Shown here piece by piece: positions 13,930 through 62,304 of a stretch of 64,000 nucleotides of DNA. Source of the stretch: Octopus sinensis (Eukaryota); NCBI RefSeq assembly GCF_006345805.1, contig NC_043016.1, forward strand, positions 5,084,001 through 5,148,000. Reading direction: 5' to 3'. The translations under genes and the position numbers were made by a program. The notes below the pieces were generated by a model, which was given only the letters and a program-made list of their open reading frames with translations, was not told where the DNA came from and made no database searches. Position 1 is the first letter of the stretch, and each line of letters starts with the position of its first letter.

Positions 13930-13931
<2 letters not shown>
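13651..13931 (-). mobile_element. CR1/L2-group LINE 3' end with (AATC)n tail
   Basis: GPQLFNILPKNLRDLHGVDADVFKMKLDLFLSGIPDEP..RAAASNSL, then 3' UTR GGCGGTGCCCCAGCATGGCCACAG..CTGAAAC. Confidence 0.75.
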
Positions 13932-13976
<45 letters not shown>

Positions 13977-13987
13977 TAAGAATTGTC

Positions 13988-14270
13988 TATAACAAGGGCA
14001 CTAAAGCATCAGTTTTGCTAAAAATAGGAGTCAAAAATACCCCGAAGCCACAAAAATTAACGCTAATTAACTGAAGAGAATCAAATACTTTTGTCGCTAA
14101 ATTCGAATCATGACACCAGGTTAACTTGTATTTTTCAGAGCTAAGACGCAATCCTTCTTCACTTAGTTTTTTCCAATCATGCATGTAAAAATTTAGTGTT
14201 AAATCTAATGGCTCGGAGTATTTTTGTTTGCTATTTTCAGCAAAGCTGGTGCTTTAGTGCTCTTGTTATA
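13988..14270. mobile_element. MITE with ~75-bp imperfect TIRs
   Basis: TATAACAAGGGCACTAAAGCATCAGTTTTGCT.. versus reverse complement TATAACAAGAGCACTAAAGCACCAGCTTTGCT.. Confidence 0.75.
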
Positions 14271-14275
14271 TATAA

Positions 14276-14309
<34 letters not shown>

Positions 14310-15105
14310 TTTTGCATATATATATATATATATGTGTGTGTGTGCATAACATGGTATGATTATAAACGGTAAATTTTAGCCATTTCTCTGCAGACAGGAA
14401 AAAAAATGAACATCCTTAATCGATTTTCAAACCTTAATGTGTTCTTATCAGAGGAATCTACATCATTCTGACAGTCTCCAGAGAAACAAGCATCCAAACT
14501 CTTGATATACTCAATAAATGCAGCAGTTGCTCTATGCAGGAGTCCCTAATTTGCATACCGAAAGTATTTAGAGTCGATCTTTTCGGAGAAGCATTCTGGT
14601 CATTTTTGAAAATCAGCAGTCTACTTATTTTGACTCAAAAAATCTCTTTTTGGGAGTAATGGCGTTATGGTCCTATCATCTGTAAGTGCATTGCTTAAGG
14701 CTGCAGGTGAGTTGGTATAGAAGATGCCCCTCAACCTGCAACATCATTAACTAACATACAACTGGTTATACAACATACAAAATATTACTGTCAGCATCAA
14801 CAGGCTATGATGGAATGAATAATAAATATTATCTTCTGACAAAGATTAAATAGTAAATTGAATATTTTCAAGTAAGCATGGGTAAACTCTGATAGTATTG
14901 ATTTTTCATTTAAAGCCAATAATTTATTACTGTTACTCTTTCGAATACAATCTGAAATATGTCCTCATTCAGAAATAAGACATCTGTTGACGATTGGAAT
15001 GGAAAAACCGATAAAATTGTCGTTCTCACGAAGTTAATAATGCGAATAATATAGTCTTACTAACAATTTATTTCAGACAGATATTAATAAAAAGTATGAA
15101 CTTAC

Positions 15106-15744
15106 ATAAGCATTTACATGTGGGACACTATTTGCTGTTGCATCCGTCAATTCTGGTACTTGATGCTTTATATTTTGCCCATGCGTTTCTGTCATTCCAT
15201 CTTGATCAATATCGCCGTCCATCATATTACCCTGATCACCAAATTTGCTGTCCACATAATTTTTCTTGTTTTCTCTTAACCCTCCATTTTCATTGACATC
15301 TTCAGCCTTTTCGTTTTCTTCTCCCTCATTGCCTCTTTTCTTGTCTTTTACGTTTTTACCATTACTCGCTTTTCTGTTTTCCTCTATCTTTTTATCAGTG
15401 AGTTCTTTTCCTTCTTCGACCGCCATCTTTCCGACATCTCTTTTACTCCGATGGTTTTCCGTTTCCACCTCTACCAGCTGTTCTTTTTCTACATTATATT
15501 CACCATTTTCGAATTTCTTTGAGTTTCGATAATTGCTTAACTTGTCCCTATAGTTTTGTCCGTCGTCTTCTTGACCCCACGCTAACTTTTGATTCACTAC
15601 GATACCATCAAATTCATCATCTGTATTGTCATTTCCAGATGTTTCTATAACTTTGGCGACATCAAACCGTTTGAAATTAACTCCTTCTGCTGAATACATG
15701 TATAATAGCATCATTAAAATGCATCCTGTATCTACAAACCTCAT
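15106..15744 (-). CDS. MMP: MMP-B coding exon 1: signal peptide + long acidic extension (213 codons)
   Basis: Open 639-nt frame from ATG. Hydrophobic N-terminus MRFVDTGCILMMLLYMYSAEG; KR(25-26), RSKR(99-102), KKR(135-137). Perfect phase-0 donor TAT|gtaagt that joins in frame to exon 2. Confidence 0.82.
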
Positions 15745-16882
15745 AGTTATTAATGAAGTATTAACGAGTTCTTTCTTTTTTATATATATATGAATATAAG
15801 ATTGTGGAGGTGCGAGCGTATATGCGAGTTTATTTTCCTACTGCAACGTCACAATAAGTCTTATTTACTGATGTTGTTAATATTGTCTTATGGATAATTC
15901 CTTGTTCACATCTGCTTTTACCTGTATTACACTGGCTTATACAACCAGCTTCTCTCAAATTTATATATATATGTATGTGTGGGTGTGTAGATAAATAAAT
16001 AAACAAATAATCGTATGTATGTATGTATGTATGTATGTATAGGTGTAGAGGGGCGGGAATGTATATGTACTGTCTGTTTTTCTTCGTGTGTGTAGACGGT
16101 TCTATTTTTTTACTGGATTCCTATTTGTGACTGCTGCTCCATTTATTATATATAAAAAAACACAATATTTGTTTTAATGTTTGTTTTGACAAAAGAGAAA
16201 CTTGTTACCAAATTCTAATTTCTTTTATGTTCAATGGAGCGTTCTGTTTACGTAACAGTAGAGTTGTCTTCAAAATACCAACTGAACATTCTAACCTACA
16301 CTACTTCTATTGTTTGCTTGATGACGTTCAGACGGAGTCAAGCAAATTAATTTATTCACTTATACGAGCATACACACGTTCGGTTATAAGTACAACCCAC
16401 CTCACAGATATGTGGTTATGTGTATAAATGTATATATATATATGTGTGTGTGCGTGCGCACCTATAAACGTATGTATATGTACTCATATATGTTCATTTT
16501 AACAGACGTTGCATTTTCTTGAATCATCACTCTAGGTCTCGCGCTTCCGATTATTCAGCCGATTTAATTAGAGAAGCCACATGAGATGCTAACGAAAATG
16601 TTTCCTAGTGCTTCGAAATACAATCAGTAAACACGATTGGCTGACGAAGAAACGTAAGAAAATTCGTCGTAAATTTATTTCTAGTTGTAGAACCCACGAT
16701 ATTTTCAGTTATTCTCTTAAAATACCTGAGCTTTTAAAACATCTGTATCAAATGCATAAACACTCATGAGAGAAAACATTACTTGAAAATGTTTTATAAA
16801 TATTAAATATAAATTCATTTTAAATAAGTAATCATCTTTCAGAAAATGTTGAGTCTATTATATAAAAAATATACATTATATA

Positions 16883-27431: not shown

Positions 27432-29847
27432 CCACCTCTAAGTACTTACTGAGGTTCATATTATTAAAACCTTAGCACTGACAAAGAGACTCTAGTTAAA
27501 GTTCCTGTCTATTGGTTTTGCCCGACTCTCATTACTAGGAAAGAAAGCTTCCTGTCTGTTTTCACTATTGCAGTGTGTTCTGGTACGGCTATCTACCAAT
27601 CCACACTCTTTCAGTTCTGGTACCTTTTTTGGTAGAAGTTTATGTTTTCAATCCTAACAACACACTCGGATGCAATATTCTTAACCTTCTGTCCATAGAC
27701 CCTATCCACTTGCAAGCTAGACAGCTCATGCCTAATTTGTACTCTGAGACCTGAAATCTGGAAAAGATAATAAACTCGTTTCAACAGCCCAAACTCATAG
27801 TTGCAACACGAGTTTCTTTGCATCGCATCCTTTCTACTCATCAGTGAAACGCAATTAAAGATCTCACAGTCACTACGTAGGCAACTCTCCACAAGCACTG
27901 ATTATTTTCTTTTATAGCAACACCATAACAACTGCACCAGACAGTGTAAGTTTCCACTTTATGGCCAGAAAAAAAAACTCGGGTTTCATCATTTACTGAT
28001 ATTCTATAGAATCCAAATAATATCCCCATTGAAGTACTTTTCACATCTATGGGGCTCCGGGGTAATGGGGCAATACTGCTACTTGGTGCGCTAACACACT
28101 AGGCCACATCCAAACGGAAGCTATCCGGCTGTTGGACAAAACACTTTATTACTTGTCTATTGGCGCTCTGTTTCTTCTCTCAGTGCCTTCTACTGATATT
28201 TGAATTAATTCTGCGCTTCTGAGATATCCTGTTGCACAATGCTTTCATCTGGGTTCACTCCATTTACTCGCTTCTGTTTATCTTATCTTCATTGCTGTCA
28301 ACTCTCCTTTAAGACTCAGACCCTAACTTCTCAAACAAGCAATCATCCGAATTCTTTCACTGAATATGTCTTTAGTACATACATGGACCAAACATCCATC
28401 TCACTAACTTCATCAGGGCTGCATAAATTATGTGCAATGAACCTACCTGAGTGACTAACGTATAAAATATTTTTCAATGTTTTAGCGTATCAATAAGAAA
28501 AACTTGTAATGATATAACCATACAGATCAAAACTTTGGTTACGGTGAGATTTAGAACTGAAATAGTATCTCAGTTTCTGATGATCATTCTACTCGTAGCT
28601 AAAATATTATCTCAACATTTGCTGGCCTCACCTTTTAGAGATGATAATCTACATGAACAACACAAAACATAAAGTAAGGTGGTCTGGCGCGTCCATGACA
28701 AAGATAAGGTAGATTTCTTTGAAATCTCATTTCTTTGTTAAAAACTGGGAAGGAAATGCCAACAGTAATCTAGAGAAGTTGATAAAATGAATACAAAACT
28801 CTTTACATATATGTATGTATGTATGCATGGTGTGTATTGTATGTGTGTGTGTGTGTGTGTGTGTGCGTGTGTGCGCGTGCGCGCATATCGTGATGTGATT
28901 CATAACGATAAGTATATGGGTGAAATATGAGTCCGTAGTCAATTTGTACTAAAGTATTATCTTCACGTTTCTACATCAAACCCTTAATATTGCCAAGCTT
29001 CCGTTGTCTCTTACCTTGTTGATCGTCACGTTTGTTAAACAATATAGGGTTTGTTTTCTTCAAATCTATACGGGAAGTCGATTCAAAAGAACTGAATATA
29101 AAATTCCATGTAGTTTTCTTTCGTGACGTGACTCATCCATTTTTATGGTCTCATCAAGTGAAAACTTTTATTGATTCAGTATATCTGCTATCTTCATCAG
29201 ACCATCTAGTTGTCCATAATCTATTTTTTCTATCTATTCTTCTTTAAATTATTTGGGTGATACATTCTGTGTAACGCCGTACTCAGCAATGGTGTTATAT
29301 TTCTTACTTATTGGGACTATTAATGTTAGGAAGAATAACTTCTAGATATTAGATACAATTCTAGTTTTTGTTAAATAATTTATCCTCAATAAGTTTTAGA
29401 GGAAAAGTTATTGCCATAAATGGATTTATCCACAGTGACAGATAAAAGATGAAATCATTCTTGAGTAAGTAAATATAATTATTAGTTGTATTAGATTTAT
29501 TAATCAAGGGAAACAAAATGATGACACTAACTTGCAGTATTTACTTTCGTTCATCTAAATTCTAATCCCCTGGATCAAATATTCCTTTCATCCTTCACAG
29601 GTCAACGAAATAAACTCCAGTGGAGTTATCTGTTTCTCAAAATGTGTGACCCTTCCTAGAAGTGACTAGATTATATATATATATTATATTCTAACAGGTG
29701 TGGCTGTGTGATAAGACGCTTGCATCTCAACCACATGATTCCGGGTTCATCCCACAGCATGGCAGCTTGGGCCTTGGGTTGAGCAAAGCCTTGAGAGTGA
29801 ATTTGATGAAAAAGAAAACTGGAAAAGCACGTCGTACATATACATAT

Positions 29848-32658: not shown

Positions 32659-35600
32659 ACCCAGAGACCTCAAGAGACAACAGGTTGGAAGTTCTGTGCC
32701 ATATATTTGGGTTTTTTTTCTTTTTTCTTTTTCTTTTTTTGGTGTTGTACTAGTGAATGTCTAATACATAAAAAAAAATAAATAAATAAAAAGTTTGTTT
32801 TAAACCTTGGGATTACATAGAGAGTATTTTGCGTAGGATATGAGCAGTTCCCATGAGCACTATCTTTTGAACTTCTGCCATTTTTGGGTTTCCTGGTATC
32901 TGAGTTAGGTAGCAATCAGTCCCTTTCGCTATCATTCCCAGGGGACCTATGACAACAGGTATTGTTTTAGTCTTCAGCTTCCACATTTTGCTGATTTCTT
33001 TCAAGATCTTTATATTTGCTCAGTTTTTGGTAGGTCTTGACAGATACGTTTATACGATTGGGACAGTCATATCAATGAGGAGGCATGTTCTTTGTCTGAA
33101 GTCTTTCAATATAACGTCTGGCCTATTTGCATCTATCTTCCTGTCAGTTTGAATGGTGAAGTTCCAGAGGAGTGAGATGTGGTCATTTTCAAGCACAGGA
33201 GGTGGATTGTGTTCCCACCAGTTTTTTTCATGGGGCAAATCCAGGTTTTTGCAAATTACCCAGTGAATAATATTGTGCAGCTCTATCATGCCTACTGAGG
33301 TACTCTGTAGGCGCTAGAAGACTGCATTTGGAGACAACATGGTCAATGGTTTCAGTTTGTTGTCGGCATACACGACATGTTGGGCTACTGCCGTTCTTTA
33401 ATATGTTGGCCTGGTAGTTTCTTGTGGTAGGCATTGATCTTGAGCTGCTATGATAAACCCCTCTGTTTCAGATTTTAAGCCAGAGGCCATTAGCCATTGA
33501 TGGGTCAGGGCTTTGTCGATATCTGCATTATTCGCTCTCTTTGGGTATTTGCCATAGAGAGGTTTTCTTGCCATTTATTATTCAGAATATCTAAGGCCGC
33601 AGTTTTGGCACGGGTTTTCATGCGCCTAGCTTTTTCGTGCTTGTTTCTTGTATATCTATCTCTAATTCCGAAATTGGTTGTATTCGGAATTCACTTAGAT
33701 ATTCCTTTGCCTGTTTTGTTACTGAGTATGATGTTTTCTTGTTTTCATGTTTTGAGACAAGTTTTAACATCCAGTCCTCAGAGTTTTTCAGGTAGGTGTC
33801 TAGGCCAATTGTAGCAATCTTCATTGTTATTGCCAGTTGCAAAAGACCACGGACTCCCTCTTTTCTTGGCAGATAGAGTCGTTCTGTATCTGCCTTAGGG
33901 TGGTGCATTCTATGCATTGTCAACAGTTTCCTTATTTTTCTGTCGAGCTGACATATTTCAGTAATTGACCAGTTAACAATATTGAAACTGTAAGTCCCGA
34001 CTGGTATGGCTAATGCATTGATCGCTTCGATCCTGTTTCTTGCATTCAGCTCTGTCTTGAGTATTGCTCTCACTCTTCGATAGCATTCTCTCCTGATCCT
34101 TTCCTTCATCTCTGAATGCCTTATTCCGTTCCCTTCAATTACCCCTAGGTACTTGTAGCTCTCCGCTGGGTCTAGTTCTTTTATGACATTCTGTTGGCAG
34201 GTTTTAACGTTAGATGTTTCTGTCATTTTTCCTTTGATAAAGGTAGCCTTTGCACATTTATCGAGGCCGAATTGCATTCTGATGTCGTCACTGAATTGTT
34301 TGACTATCGCTAGTAAGCCCTTGAGTTGTTGATCATTTTTTGCAAAAAGCTTTAAATCATCATTGTGTAAACGAGGTGATTTATATTTTTATCAAACATT
34401 TATCCCGCACTGCGCGCATTGAGCAGCTTTGAGAGAGGTATTAAGGATAAACAAAAGAGGAGTGGTGACAGTGAGTCACCCTGGAAAATGCCACACGAAA
34501 TTTTTACATCACCAGCATTTAGGGATTCATTGTCACTGTTCAGAGTTAGTGTGGTTCTCCATGATCTCATACTTACAGTCAAGAAGTTTCGCAGAGTAGG
34601 TGCTATCTTATACATTTCCAGGCATTTCCTAATCCAGCTATGTGGTAGGCTATCAAAAGCCCTTTTATAGTCTATCCAGGCTATTGATAAGTTTTTGTGT
34701 CGTTTGTGACAATCTTCTAAGATCATCTTATTGATGAGTAGTTGGTCTTTACAGCCGTAGGATCCACGTTTACATCCTTTCTGTTCATTAGGGAATATGC
34801 TGCGTCTGTTAAAAAAACTATAGGTATATTCCGTCAGGACAGATGTTAGTGTTTTGTACATAGTTGTTAAGCAGGTTATGGGTCTATAGTTTTTGGTTCA
34901 TTTGTTTCTTCACTTTTTGGAAGCAGGAATGTTAACCCATTAACTAGCCAAGGAGGCATCCTACTAGGGTGTTGCAAAACATCATTGTACAGTTCTGTTA
35001 GCAGTTCATGGCTCTCTGGGAAGACATTCAGCCAGAAGTTAGGAATTTTATCCTTTCTTGGAGACTTCCATTTGCTTGACCTCCTGAGAGCAGATCTTAT
35101 ATCTTCTACACCCTCCCACTTTTGCTCTTCTAAGGGGTCCAGTTCTGTAGATATTCTGTCAATCCAAGGGGGCCTTTTCGTTGTGTGTTTTTTCTTCTGC
35201 CCAGATTTTATTCCAGAATCCCTGCACTTCTTCTTTTGATGGTACAGACCTTGCAGTAAACGCTGTTTTTCCTATCTTCCTGTAAAAATTCTTGGTGTTA
35301 TTTTTGAACATGTTGTTGTCCTTGAAAAATCTAACACGCTTTTCATACCTCGCTATGCGGGCAGCTTTGGCAGATACCTTTTGTTTGATGGTTTCTATGG
35401 TGGCATCAATATCAAGTATAGTTTTCATATTGTATTTTTTCAGTAATTTTGGGGTTTTTGTAGGTTTGGTAGTCTTGTGAGCCTTAAGTTTTTCAAATAT
35501 TCAATGTCAGATCTAAATATTTTAATTTGTTGTTGCAGACGCTCTTGCCAAGAAGGCTTTTGTGGGAATGTTGCCGTTTTCTAATCTTTACACCACATAG

Positions 35601-36415: not shown

Positions 36416-39400
36416 GTCATTGCCTTTGCACAGCTTCTAACACTGGAGATGTACTACGGTGTCAGTTGTTCACTACCAGTGAACTACCCCTTAATTTTCG
36501 AGCACCTTCCGGAGTATTCAAGCGGTTTCAAACAGTGCTGTTTTCTGCAAGTGCTCCACACTTATTGCAGCCTCTATTTGTTCCACGTACTTCTCAAGAT
36601 TTTTGCTTACTCTTCCCAAGGCTCTGATAATTATTGGTACTACTGCTACCTTTTTCCTCGGATACAACTGCTGAACTTCCCAAGCTAACCTGTCATATCT
36701 ATCGACTTTCCTTTGTTCCTTATCGCATACCTTGTTGTCAGCTGGGGGCATGCTATATCTATGATCCAGTATAGTTTTTTTTTCTTTCTCAATTAAGACT
36801 ATGCCCGGCTTCCTATTCTTTATCTCATTGCCGCCCTGAATCATAAAATCCCATAGGATCTTTGCATTATCATTTTCGATGATGCCTTCAGGTTTGTGGT
36901 CGTACCAATTGTTTGCTCTGTCAAGTCCATATTTGTTGCAAAGTGTCCAATGGACAATCCATGATATATTGTCATAGCGACTCTTGTATTCTTTCCGAGC
37001 TAGTGGCGTACATTGGCTGGTAATATGCCATACGGTTTCACCATTTTGTCCACAAATTCTGCATTACCACTTTCTGATGCGTTGTCTCTTCTGTGTTTGA
37101 TGTAGTTGGTTCTTATTGCTTGTTCTTGGGCAGCACAGATTAGAGCCATCTTTTCTCTCTGTCTGCTTTATCTTCAATATCCCTATGAAATTGTCCATGT
37201 ATTCTTTTCTTAACCCACCTATTTTCAGTTTCATTCATTCTCAAGTCCTTGTATAGTGCTTTATCTTTGCAATCTTCCACCCTACACAAGCCTGGCCTTA
37301 TTTCCTATAATAGCGCTTCTGTGGCATTTTTTACATACCATGCTATGTTGTTTTTTCTACTCTAATCCTGTGTTCGCATCCAATAAGTACTCTTCCCCCT
37401 CCTTTTCTTGATACATACAGTCTGTGTCACTTTTTGGGTGGTGTATCCCCATATCTTGTCAGCAACGTCCTTGCCTTTCTGTCTAAGCAGTCTAGTTACT
37501 CTACTCTCCATGCGATTACCTGTGCTCCATATCTAAGTAGTGAAACCGACCAAGTGTTGATAACTTCGATCTTATTCCGTCCGTTTAATTTCGACTTAAG
37601 GATCAGTCTCAATCTGCGCAAATACTCCACCTTAAATTTTCTGTCATTTCTTTCTTCATCAATTTATCCATTTCCAAAATCCCCAAGTACTTATAGCCCG
37701 GCTCTTCTATCTGCTTCATAACCTCCCCCGATAGTATCACTATCCCGTCCATGCATTTGATTTTGTCTCTCTTCAAGACTAATACACCACACTTTTTCAG
37801 TTCGAACTCCATTCTAATATCAGCACTGAAGGTATACACCGTATCAACGAGGGAGCTGACTTGGGCTTCATTTTTACCATAAAATCTGAAGTCATCCATG
37901 GATAACAAGTGCTTGATTTTTTTTATGGCGGCTCTTGAATACATGCCCAGCTTTTGCTTTCCTCGGAATCAATGTTAGTGATATCAATCACAATACAAAT
38001 ATCAGTGGGGACAGGCAGTCCCCTTGGACGATGCTTCTCCCGATGTCTATTGTCCCTAAATTTCTTCCATATGCTATCAGTTTCGTCCTCCACTTTGCGA
38101 TACTTTTTCCAAACAATCTCTCTACATTTGATGCAATATCAAATAGGTTCATACACTCCATGATCCAAGAATGTAGGATCATATCGTACGCCTTACGATA
38201 GTCGATCCAATACGTGGCTTAGTTACTTTTTCTCCTCTTGCAGTTTCTAAATACAGCTTTGTCTACTAGGAATTGATTCTTGTTACTTCTGCACTTACAC
38301 TTGCAACCCTTGTGCTCATGTGGCAGGACTCCATTTTTTTCCAGATGTTCGGACATTGACTCTGCGAGTTTTCCAGTCAATAACTTCCACATAAGTGGCA
38401 AACAGGATATCGGCCTGTAATTGCTTACTCTATTGCCTTTTTCGATGTTTTTCAAGCACAGAAGTGTCCTACACACTGTCAACCACTTTGGTGTTACTTG
38501 GCCGACATCTAACAAGATGTTGAGTTTCGTAGCTATTTATGCATGACATTCACTAAATCTTTTTATCCAGTGGCCTTGAACTCCATCTGGTCCCGGGACC
38601 TTCCAGTAGCCCATTTTTTTTTCGCCGATTACCTTCACTTCCCTAACTGAACTAGTTCTGTCTTTTTGGGGCAAACTACTGTTTGTTTTAGTTCTTGCAA
38701 CTATTCAGCACCCTTCTTGTGCTTCTTGTCTTTGCTCCAGATGTCACTCCAAAACCTTTGACTTTCAATGTTATCTGGTATCAACTTTCCATCTGTACAC
38801 CCTCCATTTATTTCTTTGTAGAATCTCTTCTGATCTACTCTGAATAACCTATTCTGGTAGCAACCCTTCATTCTTTAGACGTATCTTACCATCTTTGCTT
38901 TCTTTGCAACGAGACGCTGTTCCAGTTCCTCCACTACTACTTTCAGGCCCTTTCTGTCTATATTACACTTCCTTTTCAGCGCCCTGTATTTTTGTTCGCT
39001 TTTAAGTTCCCCTTTCTCTTTTCGGTCTAACACAGAGTTTTCCTTCGAGAGCATGTTTAACCCTGCCTAGATTCTTCTTTTCCACCATGGATCCTTTCTT
39101 TTGTCACTCCCATTACGTTTCTCATGTTTTCTGCTACAACAATACTTGCTGCCTTCATCAAATTATTAGTTTCTGTGATATTTTTTATTCTGATGTATTT
39201 CAGAATATCATTGACATTTTTCGTTTCTTGGTTCATCTTCAACCGGTCAATCTTTTTAATGTTGCAAATAATGTTGCTATCGTTCTCCCGTAGCCTTGCC
39301 TTTATTCTGTCGTAGATTGCCTTTTGCCCCTCTGTCATGTCGCCATCAGTATTATGGTCTTCTTCCAAACCATCTATATGTCTCTCATCGAGCAAGCTAT

Positions 39401-62127: not shown

Positions 62128-62304
62128 CAGCAAATAAGTAGCTCGTATTTTTATTTGCATCGAATGCTGCAGCGGACACATAAGATGGATATTGAGAACC
62201 ATGAAAGGTATCCGATATACTATGATATCCAGGTTTGAGGGAACCGAAACGATCAAATTCATATACTTGGTCTCCCCTAAAAGCAAGGTAACCACCATTA
62301 TGAT
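62128..62304 (-). CDS. MMP: MMP-A hemopexin-like exon (symmetric, phase 1-1)
   Basis: Acceptor ..tttttcattcttgcag, donor G|gtaagt. Translates (D)HNGGYLAFRGDQVYEFDRFGSLKPGYHSISDTFHGSQYPSYVSAAAFDANKNTSYLFA, a recognisable hemopexin repeat. MMP identity (versus a hemopexin-only protein) is inferred from the neighbouring gene. Confidence 0.9.

What the first reader, a model, noticed from the sequence alone, without database searches (positions are those of the whole stretch)
15106..15680. MMP with a ~190-residue acidic, multi-basic-site extension ahead of its pro-domain
Seen: between the signal peptide (~21 aa) and the canonical pro-domain lies a D/E/N/K-rich, Cys-free, probably disordered segment with KR, RSKR and KKR sites, all in one exon. 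Known: typical MMP pro-domains start almost directly after the signal peptide. Inference: convertase processing could release separate peptides (a prohormone-like module on a protease), or the segment may control latency, ion binding or matrix binding. The activating-position furin site is absent while this upstream one is present.
Basis: partly seen in the sequence, partly recalled or inferred. Interest (0 to 1): 0.72.

Follow-up and report, generated by a model that had tools for sequence, protein, structure and literature searches.

The report
Octopus MMP with disordered N-terminal extension
The first exon of an octopus matrix-metalloproteinase gene really does add about 185 acidic, probably disordered residues between the signal peptide and the pro-domain, but the segment evolves almost neutrally and looks like a lineage-specific spacer rather than a hormone-like module.

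Summary
Exon 1 (15744..15106) encodes a signal peptide, a Cys-free E/K/N/D/G-rich segment of about 185 residues (pI 4.9, net charge -12) and the first residues of the pro-domain. It joins in phase, through GTAAGT donors, to exon 2 (11464..11382) and exon 3 (10234..10101, PRCGVPD).

The catalytic domain lies outside the window. It is intact in the collinear Octopus vulgaris locus. The deposited model there (CAI9734326.1) makes the same exon joins but skips the catalytic exon and starts at M16.

A second octopod has the same exon at 61% amino-acid identity. The reading frame is kept, which is unlikely under neutral substitution (P = 0.004-0.02), and the only indel is 3 nt. However, dN/dS in the extension is about 0.85. 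Dibasic sites are not enriched, and conservation is not patchy. RSKR is conserved, but that could be chance.

No furin motif follows the cysteine switch. No homologue of the extension was found outside Octopus.

Best reading: a fast-evolving disordered pre-pro segment that is discarded on activation and possibly clipped at RSKR. The prohormone idea is not supported. No RNA evidence was available. Interest is modest.

The parts
15106..15744 (-). Exon 1 coding part (213 codons): signal peptide, extension and the first residues of the pro-domain. The donor GTAAGT at 15105-15100 is in phase 0.
   Evidence: The exon is 99.4% identical to O. vulgaris L002 9956-10594. It is orthologous to L001 220-861 at 81.5% nt and 61% aa identity.
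15682..15744 (-). Predicted signal peptide, MRFVDTGCILMMLLYMYSAEG. The hydrophobic core is GCILMMLLYMY, and A-E-G fits the -3/-1 rule.
   Evidence: Kyte-Doolittle profile. dN/dS is 0.35 here against 0.85 in the extension. This is a heuristic only; SignalP was not available.
15130..15681 (-). The N-terminal extension, residues 22-205: E/K/N/D/G-rich, Cys-free, no repeats and no Pfam domain.
   Evidence: The only homologues found are P0001 and P0002.
15439..15450 (-). RSKR (residues 99-102), the only RX[KR]R proprotein-convertase consensus. It is conserved in the second octopod (HRSKR).
15667..15672 (-). KR (residues 25-26), conserved in the second octopod.
15334..15342 (-). KKR (residues 135-137). 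It is not conserved as such; the second octopod has EKK.
11382..11464 (-). Exon 2 (83 nt): HFLMQFGYIDNSPYSPLSLTNPTTEAL-K, helix 1 and loop of the pro-domain. The acceptor is in phase 0 and the donor GTAAGT in phase 2.
10101..10234 (-). Exon 3 (134 nt): KFQEFANLNVTGEFNTETIKQMSSPRCGVPDMFNGKTVFNFQIN. The donor GTAAGT is in phase 1. No furin motif follows the cysteine switch.
10141..10161 (-). Cysteine-switch motif PRCGVPD (residues 266-272).

Best explanation
Exon 1 of an octopus matrixin (MMP) gene is translated as part of the zymogen. It supplies the signal peptide, a segment of about 185 residues that is probably intrinsically disordered and mildly acidic, and the first turn of the pro-domain.

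The segment is a lineage-restricted, fast-evolving 'pre-pro' spacer. Selection keeps it in frame and keeps its composition, but hardly constrains its sequence.

The enzyme is an archetypal, non-furin-activated MMP. Latency is held by the PRCGVPD cysteine switch. Activation must come from extracellular or autolytic cleavage downstream of the switch, which discards the pro-domain together with the extension.

The single convertase-grade site, RSKR(99-102), probably lets a furin-like convertase trim off residues 22-102 in the secretory pathway. That cut would not activate the enzyme.

Shown: the exon anatomy, the composition, orthology, the evolutionary rates, and the absence of an activating furin site. 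Inferred: splicing of exon 1 to exon 2, secretion, disorder, cleavage at RSKR, and the lack of a sequence-specific function.
For: Splicing of exon 1 to the pro-domain exons:
- All three donors are GTAAGT, acceptors have pyrimidine tracts, and the phases fit (0, then 0/2, then 2/1). The join gives ...VNAY|HFLMQFGY..., continuous with the PG_binding_1 match.
- O. vulgaris CAI9734326.1 makes the same joins. That model comes from a pipeline combining transcript, protein and ab initio evidence (PMC10700109).
- Intron 1 holds no alternative first exon with a signal peptide and an in-phase donor.

MMP identity:
- With its skipped in-phase exon restored, the orthologous locus encodes an intact catalytic domain: [12 protein letters not shown] plus a Met-turn, Peptidase_M10 165 bits.
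- The closest solved relatives are pro-MMP-3, pro-MMP-7 and pro-MMP-1, at E about 1e-43.

The extension is coding but weakly constrained:
- Against a second octopod, nt identity is 81.5% in the exon, 84.4% in the 5' flank and 82.9% in the intron.
- The exon has one 3-nt indel, while the flanks have many that are not multiples of three.
- Under neutral substitution the ORF would stay open with P = 0.004-0.024.
- dN/dS is 0.85 in the extension and 0.35 in the signal peptide.
- There are no internal repeats, no paralogous copy and no domain.

Other points:
- RSKR is conserved.
- No RX[KR]R follows PRCGVPD.
Against: - No RNA evidence was available. The O. vulgaris model has clear errors (it starts at M16 and skips the catalytic exon), so it may be largely ab initio.
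- Only one divergent orthologue exists in the data, so dN/dS and the conservation tests have low power.
- At 59% background identity, four conserved residues (RSKR) are expected by chance about 12% of the time.
- Retention of a 640-nt ORF implies some selection, so 'spacer' may understate a composition-dependent function.
- Disorder rests on composition only. The single-sequence AlphaFold2 run was uninformative, because the known pro-domain also scored pLDDT below 50.
- Signal-peptide cleavage was not predicted with a trained tool.
Confidence: 0.55

Rival explanations
1. The extension has a composition-dependent regulatory role. As an acidic polyampholyte tail it could shield or steer the zymogen: keeping it soluble, binding cations or basic matrix components, or carrying a glycosaminoglycan at the conserved acidic-flanked Ser-Gly (ETSGNDNTDDEF). 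Its removal at RSKR would tune where and when the zymogen can be activated.
For: - The ORF and its composition are maintained between species despite near-neutral substitution.
- The conserved islands are SGND, NSKKFxNGEYN, HRSKR, ENEKAEDV and KHQVPExTDA.
- Acidic disordered N-terminal domains on extracellular enzymes have precedent, for example the PG-like domain of carbonic anhydrase IX (my own knowledge; the enzyme is the subject of PMC8632303, listed).
Against: - The islands are no longer than chance given 59% identity (P = 0.49).
- There are no D/E runs longer than 3 and net charge is only -12.
- There is no domain hit.
- No binding or modification was tested.
Confidence: 0.2
2. This is a prohormone-like module. 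Convertases cut at KR, RSKR, KKR and the other dibasic sites and release separate bioactive peptides from the N-terminus of a protease precursor.
For: The protein has a signal peptide, 8 dibasic sites, one RX[KR]R conserved in two species, and no Cys.
Against: - The dibasic count is not above the composition expectation (P = 0.08).
- KK118-119 and KK160-161 are lost and KKR is altered in the second species.
- There is no Gly-[KR][KR] amidation signal.
- dN/dS is about 0.85, with no peptide-versus-spacer contrast.
- No homologue was found beyond Octopus.
Confidence: 0.06
3. Exon 1 is not part of the MMP mRNA. It could be a separate single-exon gene for a 223-aa secreted acidic protein (the ORF ends 10 codons into 'intron 1' in both species), or a mis-joined or alternative first exon. 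The real MMP would then start elsewhere.
For: - The ORF reads through the donor to a stop at the same place in both species.
- The O. vulgaris model is demonstrably imperfect.
- No transcript data were seen.
Against: - The donor is a perfect GTAAGT and is conserved in all three sequences.
- The phases match through three exons.
- Exon 2 has no start codon or signal peptide of its own, and intron 1 offers no substitute.
- The 10-codon read-through is explained by plain intron conservation.
Confidence: 0.1

Closest known systems
Archetypal secreted MMPs (stromelysin-1/MMP-3, matrilysin/MMP-7, collagenase/MMP-1; MEROPS M10A)
   Same: - A pro-domain with the PG_binding_1 fold and the PRCGVPD cysteine switch.
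- In the orthologous locus, a catalytic domain with [12 protein letters not shown] and a Met-turn, E about 1e-43 to 1SLM, 5UE2 and 1SU3.
- No furin motif, so activation is presumably extracellular or autolytic.
   Different: - About 170-185 extra residues lie between the signal peptide and pro-domain helix 1. PRCGVPD is about 245 residues after the signal peptide here, against about 73 in pro-MMP-3.
- No Pfam hemopexin hit in the C-terminal part of the O. vulgaris model.
Furin-activatable MMPs (MMP-11, MT-MMPs, most echinoderm MMPs; PMC8467561)
   Same: Both contain an RX[K/R]R convertase consensus.
   Different: In those enzymes the motif sits immediately before the catalytic domain and activates the enzyme. 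Here it sits about 165 residues upstream of the cysteine switch, and cleavage there would leave the zymogen latent.
ADAMTS and ADAM pro-domains with more than one convertase site (my own knowledge, not tested here)
   Same: Metzincin zymogens in which an upstream convertase site can produce a processing intermediate before the final activating cut.
   Different: Those pro-domains are folded, conserved and Cys-containing, and a second furin site performs the activation. Here the upstream region is low-complexity and fast-evolving, and no activating furin site exists.
Proteoglycan-like N-terminal domain of carbonic anhydrase IX (my own knowledge; the enzyme is the subject of PMC8632303, listed)
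   Same: An acidic, intrinsically disordered N-terminal extension placed ahead of an extracellular zinc enzyme.
   Different: There is no sequence relationship. The CA IX domain stays on the mature enzyme, whereas here the segment lies upstream of a removable pro-domain.

Membership tests
Matrixin / MMP (MEROPS M10A) | Pro-domain with a cysteine switch, PRCGxPD | tested here: met
   PRCGVPD at window 10161-10141. PG_binding_1 scores 30.9 bits against a cut-off of 23, on residues 216-263.
Matrixin / MMP (MEROPS M10A) | Catalytic domain with HExxHxxGxxH and a Met-turn | tested here: inconclusive
   Absent from the window: there is no motif and no Pfam hit in 1-10095 on the minus strand. It lies beyond the window start. 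It is present and in phase in the collinear O. vulgaris locus, at L002 about 27962-28212 ([19 protein letters not shown]; Peptidase_M10 165 bits).
Matrixin / MMP (MEROPS M10A) | N-terminal secretion signal | tested here: inconclusive
   There is a hydrophobic core at residues 8-17 and A-E-G at the -3/-1 positions. It is conserved, with dN/dS 0.35. No trained predictor was available, and the public model starts at M16.
Matrixin / MMP (MEROPS M10A) | C-terminal hemopexin repeats (present in most MMPs but not all) | tested here: not met
   No Hemopexin hit at E < 0.1 in the reconstructed O. vulgaris protein. The C-terminal exons of that model are unverified.
Furin-activatable MMP subgroup | RX[K/R]R between the cysteine switch and the catalytic domain | tested here: not met
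   The sequence after the switch is PRCGVPDMFNGKTVFNFQINRSEIILRY..., with no such motif. The only RX[KR]R is at residues 99-102.
Neuropeptide / prohormone precursor | Dibasic sites enriched above composition and flanking conserved peptides, with variable spacers | tested here: not met
   There are 8 sites against 4.9 expected (P = 0.08). The longest conserved run has P = 0.49. dN/dS is 0.85 throughout.
Neuropeptide / prohormone precursor | Amidation or processing signals (Gly-[KR][KR]) and detected mature peptides | tested here: not met
   No G[KR][KR] occurs in residues 22-213 (read from the sequence). Peptide detection cannot be tested here.
Acidic Ca-binding / biomineral-type proteins | Long poly-Asp or poly-Glu runs, or a strongly negative net charge | tested here: not met
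   The longest D/E run is 3. There are 42 D+E against 30 K+R, and pI is 4.86.

The most novel reading that the evidence does not exclude
The extension is a functional, convertase-released acidic pro-piece, so that one octopus gene yields both a latent MMP and a separate secreted N-terminal fragment with its own activity. The fragment (residues 22-102, about 9 kDa, pI 4.8) might act as a matrix- or cation-binding or signalling fragment. The RSKR cut would be a regulated step distinct from enzyme activation.
Probability: 0.07. Interest if true: 0.6.

Novelty: new variant of a known kind. Interest (0 to 1): 0.28.

Why it matters
If the segment is translated, as the evidence suggests, it is an unusual architecture for a matrixin. 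The literature I could search describes MMPs as a signal peptide followed directly by the pro-domain.

It gives a small, tractable case of how a long disordered segment is gained inside exon 1 of a conserved secreted enzyme, and then kept in frame while drifting in sequence.

It also corrects a public gene model. The O. vulgaris entry looks like a catalytically dead MMP only because an intact exon was skipped.

The functional pay-off is uncertain. Nothing here points to a new mechanism.

Tried and rejected
- **Word-indexed protein search with exon 1, then with a 3-sequence profile.** Only P0001 was found.
- **The same search with the 72-aa pro-domain.** It returned no candidates at all, although P0002 contains that stretch. 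That index therefore missed P0002 and returned no animal MMPs, so it cannot show how common such extensions are.
- **Exhaustive phmmer of exon 1 against 1.84 billion representatives.** Only P0001 and P0002 were found.
- **AlphaFold2 on residues 1-285 as a single sequence.** Mean pLDDT was 35.7, and the known pro-domain also scored below 50. The run says nothing about disorder, so I did no fold search.
- **Repeats.** Tandem Repeats Finder on window 15000-15850 and a self-BLASTP of the extension with BLASTN of exon 1 against the window and L002 found no repeats and no paralogous copy.
- **Catalytic exons in window 1-10095, minus strand.** A motif scan and a Pfam scan found none. Collinearity shows the next exon lies about 1 kb beyond the window start.
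- **An alternative first exon in intron 1 carrying a signal peptide.** None was found.
This could not be done. Only one hemopexin exon of that neighbour is in the window, and its 5' end is beyond 64000.
- **Literature searches.** Searches on octopus or mollusc MMPs and on N-terminal extensions of MMPs found nothing relevant.
- **The species of run SRR11869391.** It could not be identified.
- **Window versus O. vulgaris for selection.** With only 4 differences this is uninformative.

Full report
**1. What is at the coordinates**

The window is AT-rich eukaryotic DNA (34% G+C) full of microsatellites and reverse-transcriptase fragments. The finding lies on the minus strand.

An ORF starts at the ATG at 15744, the first ATG after an in-frame stop, and has an A at position -3. 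It runs 213 codons to a GTAAGT donor directly after codon 213, so the last coding base is 15106.

- Residues 1-21 (MRFVDTGCILMMLLYMYSAEG) have a hydrophobic core and small residues at -3 and -1.
- Residues 22-200 are E 13%, K 12%, N 12%, D 10% and G 9.5%.
- They contain no Cys and one Pro, with net charge -12 and pI 4.86.
- Charge-hydropathy values fall on the disordered side.
- KR (25-26), RSKR (99-102) and KKR (135-137) are present.
- There are no tandem or internal repeats, no paralogous copy in the window or the orthologous locus, and no Pfam domain.

**2. Is it joined to an MMP pro-domain?**

The cysteine switch PRCGVPD lies 5.5 kb downstream at 10161-10141. Between it and exon 1 I found a small exon, 11464..11382, encoding HFLMQFGYIDNSPYSPLSLTNPTTEAL-K.

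| Exon | Coordinates | Acceptor phase | Donor | Donor phase |
|---|---|---|---|---|
| 1 | 15744..15106 | (start) | GTAAGT | 0 |
| 2 | 11464..11382 | 0 | GTAAGT | 2 |
| 3 | 10234..10101 | 2 | GTAAGT | 1 |

Both acceptors have a pyrimidine tract followed by AG. The joined 285-residue N-terminus reads ...VPHVNAY|HFLMQFGYID...EALK|KFQEFANLNVTGEF...PRCGVPDMFNGKTVFNFQIN. It matches Pfam PG_binding_1 above the curated cut-off (30.9 against 23 bits, residues 216-263).

Intron 1 holds no alternative exon with a start codon, a hydrophobic leader and an in-phase donor. Exon 2 has no start of its own, so exon 1 is needed to give the protein a signal peptide.

**3. Independent gene model and the rest of the gene**

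An exhaustive phmmer search of exon 1 returned only two proteins. One is P0002, which is CAI9734326.1 / A0AA36BH44, 'matrixin family metalloprotease [Octopus vulgaris]'. It is 98% identical over exon 1 and has exactly the exon joins I derived.

Its locus, L002 (OX597829.1:4735454-4810276), is collinear with the window at 95-99% identity per aligned block, about 1.2% substitutions. The window therefore comes from O. vulgaris or a sibling species.

Window position 1 corresponds to L002 23804. The next coding exon is at L002 about 24822, roughly 1 kb beyond the window start. This explains why neither a motif scan nor a Pfam scan finds a catalytic exon in window 1-10095.

The public model has two probable errors.

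- **Start codon.** It starts at M16, although the M1 codon and the whole upstream 241 nt are identical in L002.
- **Skipped exon.** It skips an intact exon at L002 about 27962-28212. That exon is in phase 1 at both ends and encodes [22 protein letters not shown]...[26 protein letters not shown]...ALYG.

With that exon restored, Peptidase_M10 rises from 43.8 bits (profile positions 19-72) to 165 bits (19-159 of 159). The closest solved structures are pro-stromelysin-1, pro-matrilysin and pro-collagenase-1, at E about 1e-43.

So the gene encodes a catalytically competent archetypal MMP. No RX[KR]R lies between PRCGVPD and the catalytic domain.

The O. vulgaris annotation combined Iso-Seq and RNA-seq, protein alignments and ab initio predictions through EVM and PASA (PMC10700109). 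I cannot tell which kind of evidence supports exon 1.

**4. Conservation**

The second hit, P0001, is an ORF called on a 1254-bp genomic contig from run SRR11869391 (L001). The species is unidentified, and dS to the window is about 0.26. The contig covers the whole exon plus both flanks.

| Region | nt identity to the window |
|---|---|
| 5' flank | 84.4% |
| Exon 1 | 81.5% |
| Start of intron 1 | 82.9% |

- The exon has a single 3-nt indel, while the flanks carry several indels that are not multiples of three.
- The GTAAGT donor and the AY before it are conserved.
- I applied the observed 118 substitutions to the exon at random. The ORF stayed open in only 0.4-2.4% of trials, with a mean of 3.6-5.2 new stops. 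The reading frame is therefore under selection in both lineages.
- The sequence itself is barely constrained. Nei-Gojobori dN/dS is 0.85 for residues 22-200, against 0.35 for the signal peptide.
- Amino-acid identity in the extension is 59%. Its longest identical run (9 residues) is what shuffling gives (P = 0.49).
- RSKR, KR25-26, KK76-77 and RK124-125 are conserved. KK118-119 and KK160-161 are lost, and KKR becomes EKK.
- With 59% identity, four conserved residues in a row are expected about 12% of the time.
- Dibasic sites (8) are not significantly above the composition expectation (4.9, P = 0.08). One RX[KR]R appears in 4.7% of shuffles.
- A profile of the three sequences found no further homologues.

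**5. Interpretation**

The best-supported reading is a lineage-restricted, fast-evolving 'pre-pro' segment, probably disordered, that lies inside exon 1 of an otherwise ordinary MMP. It is translated and secreted with the zymogen.

Its only convertase-grade site, RSKR, may be cut in the secretory pathway. That cut would remove residues 22-102 and leave the cysteine switch in place. Everything upstream of the catalytic domain is discarded when the enzyme is activated by a non-furin route.

The prohormone idea fails each test that I could run: site enrichment, a peptide-versus-spacer conservation pattern, amidation signals, and breadth of conservation.

A composition-dependent role remains possible, because the ORF is maintained. 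Candidates are solubility, electrostatic shielding, cation or matrix binding, or a GAG chain at the conserved acidic-flanked SG. Nothing here tests these.

The remaining risk is that exon 1 is not in the mature MMP mRNA. Only transcript reads can settle that.

**6. Comparison and novelty**

Reviews of invertebrate MMPs describe a signal peptide followed directly by the pro-domain. [quoted passage not shown]

I found no description of a long acidic segment ahead of the pro-domain. The protein databases reachable here could not be used to survey animal MMPs.

I rate it a new variant of a known kind. The protein is already deposited, but the feature is unremarked. Interest is modest, because the evolutionary signature is that of a drifting disordered insertion.

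**7. What led nowhere**

A single-sequence AlphaFold2 run was uninformative: mean pLDDT was 35.7, and the internal control, the pro-domain, was also below 50. The neighbour 'MMP-A' is represented in the window by only one hemopexin exon, so its exon 1 could not be examined.

Noticed in passing
L002 27962-28212 (O. vulgaris OX597829.1; outside the window): The public O. vulgaris model CAI9734326.1 skips an intact, in-phase exon that encodes the zinc-binding motif [12 protein letters not shown] and the Met-turn. As annotated, the protein therefore looks like a dead protease. Restoring the exon raises Peptidase_M10 from 43.8 to 165 bits. The model also starts at M16 instead of the conserved M1 at L002 9956.
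   Followed up: yes
window 15570, 15483, 15324, 15128 (and 16082): All four differences between the window and O. vulgaris in exon 1 are G in the window and A in O. vulgaris on the coding strand. All four are non-synonymous (E59K, E88K, G141R, S206N). The next difference upstream is also G/A, whereas the regional substitution spectrum is symmetric (G>A 32 and A>G 31 of 179). K/E, R/G and N/S are the codon changes that A-to-I RNA editing mimics, so these sites are worth checking against cephalopod editing tables. With so few sites this may be chance.
   Followed up: partly
window 62129-62304 (-): A hemopexin-repeat exon with a canonical acceptor and a GTAAGT donor (Pfam Hemopexin 21.9 bits, cut-off 21.3). 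It lies about 46 kb upstream of exon 1 on the same strand.
   Followed up: partly
window 34403-34897 (-), 33621-34388 (-), 37612-37968 (-), 4892-5416 (+): These are reverse-transcriptase (RVT_1) fragments of retroelements. They lie in the intergenic region and in intron 3 of the MMP gene. The best hit is 58.5 bits.
   Followed up: partly
window ~10000-10088 (-): A (TAC)n microsatellite of about 27 units begins roughly 10 nt after the exon-3 splice donor.
   Followed up: no
window 12632-14683: About 2 kb of microsatellite-rich sequence in intron 1 has no counterpart in the O. vulgaris locus. Intron 1 is about 3.6 kb in the window and about 1.7 kb in L002.
   Followed up: no
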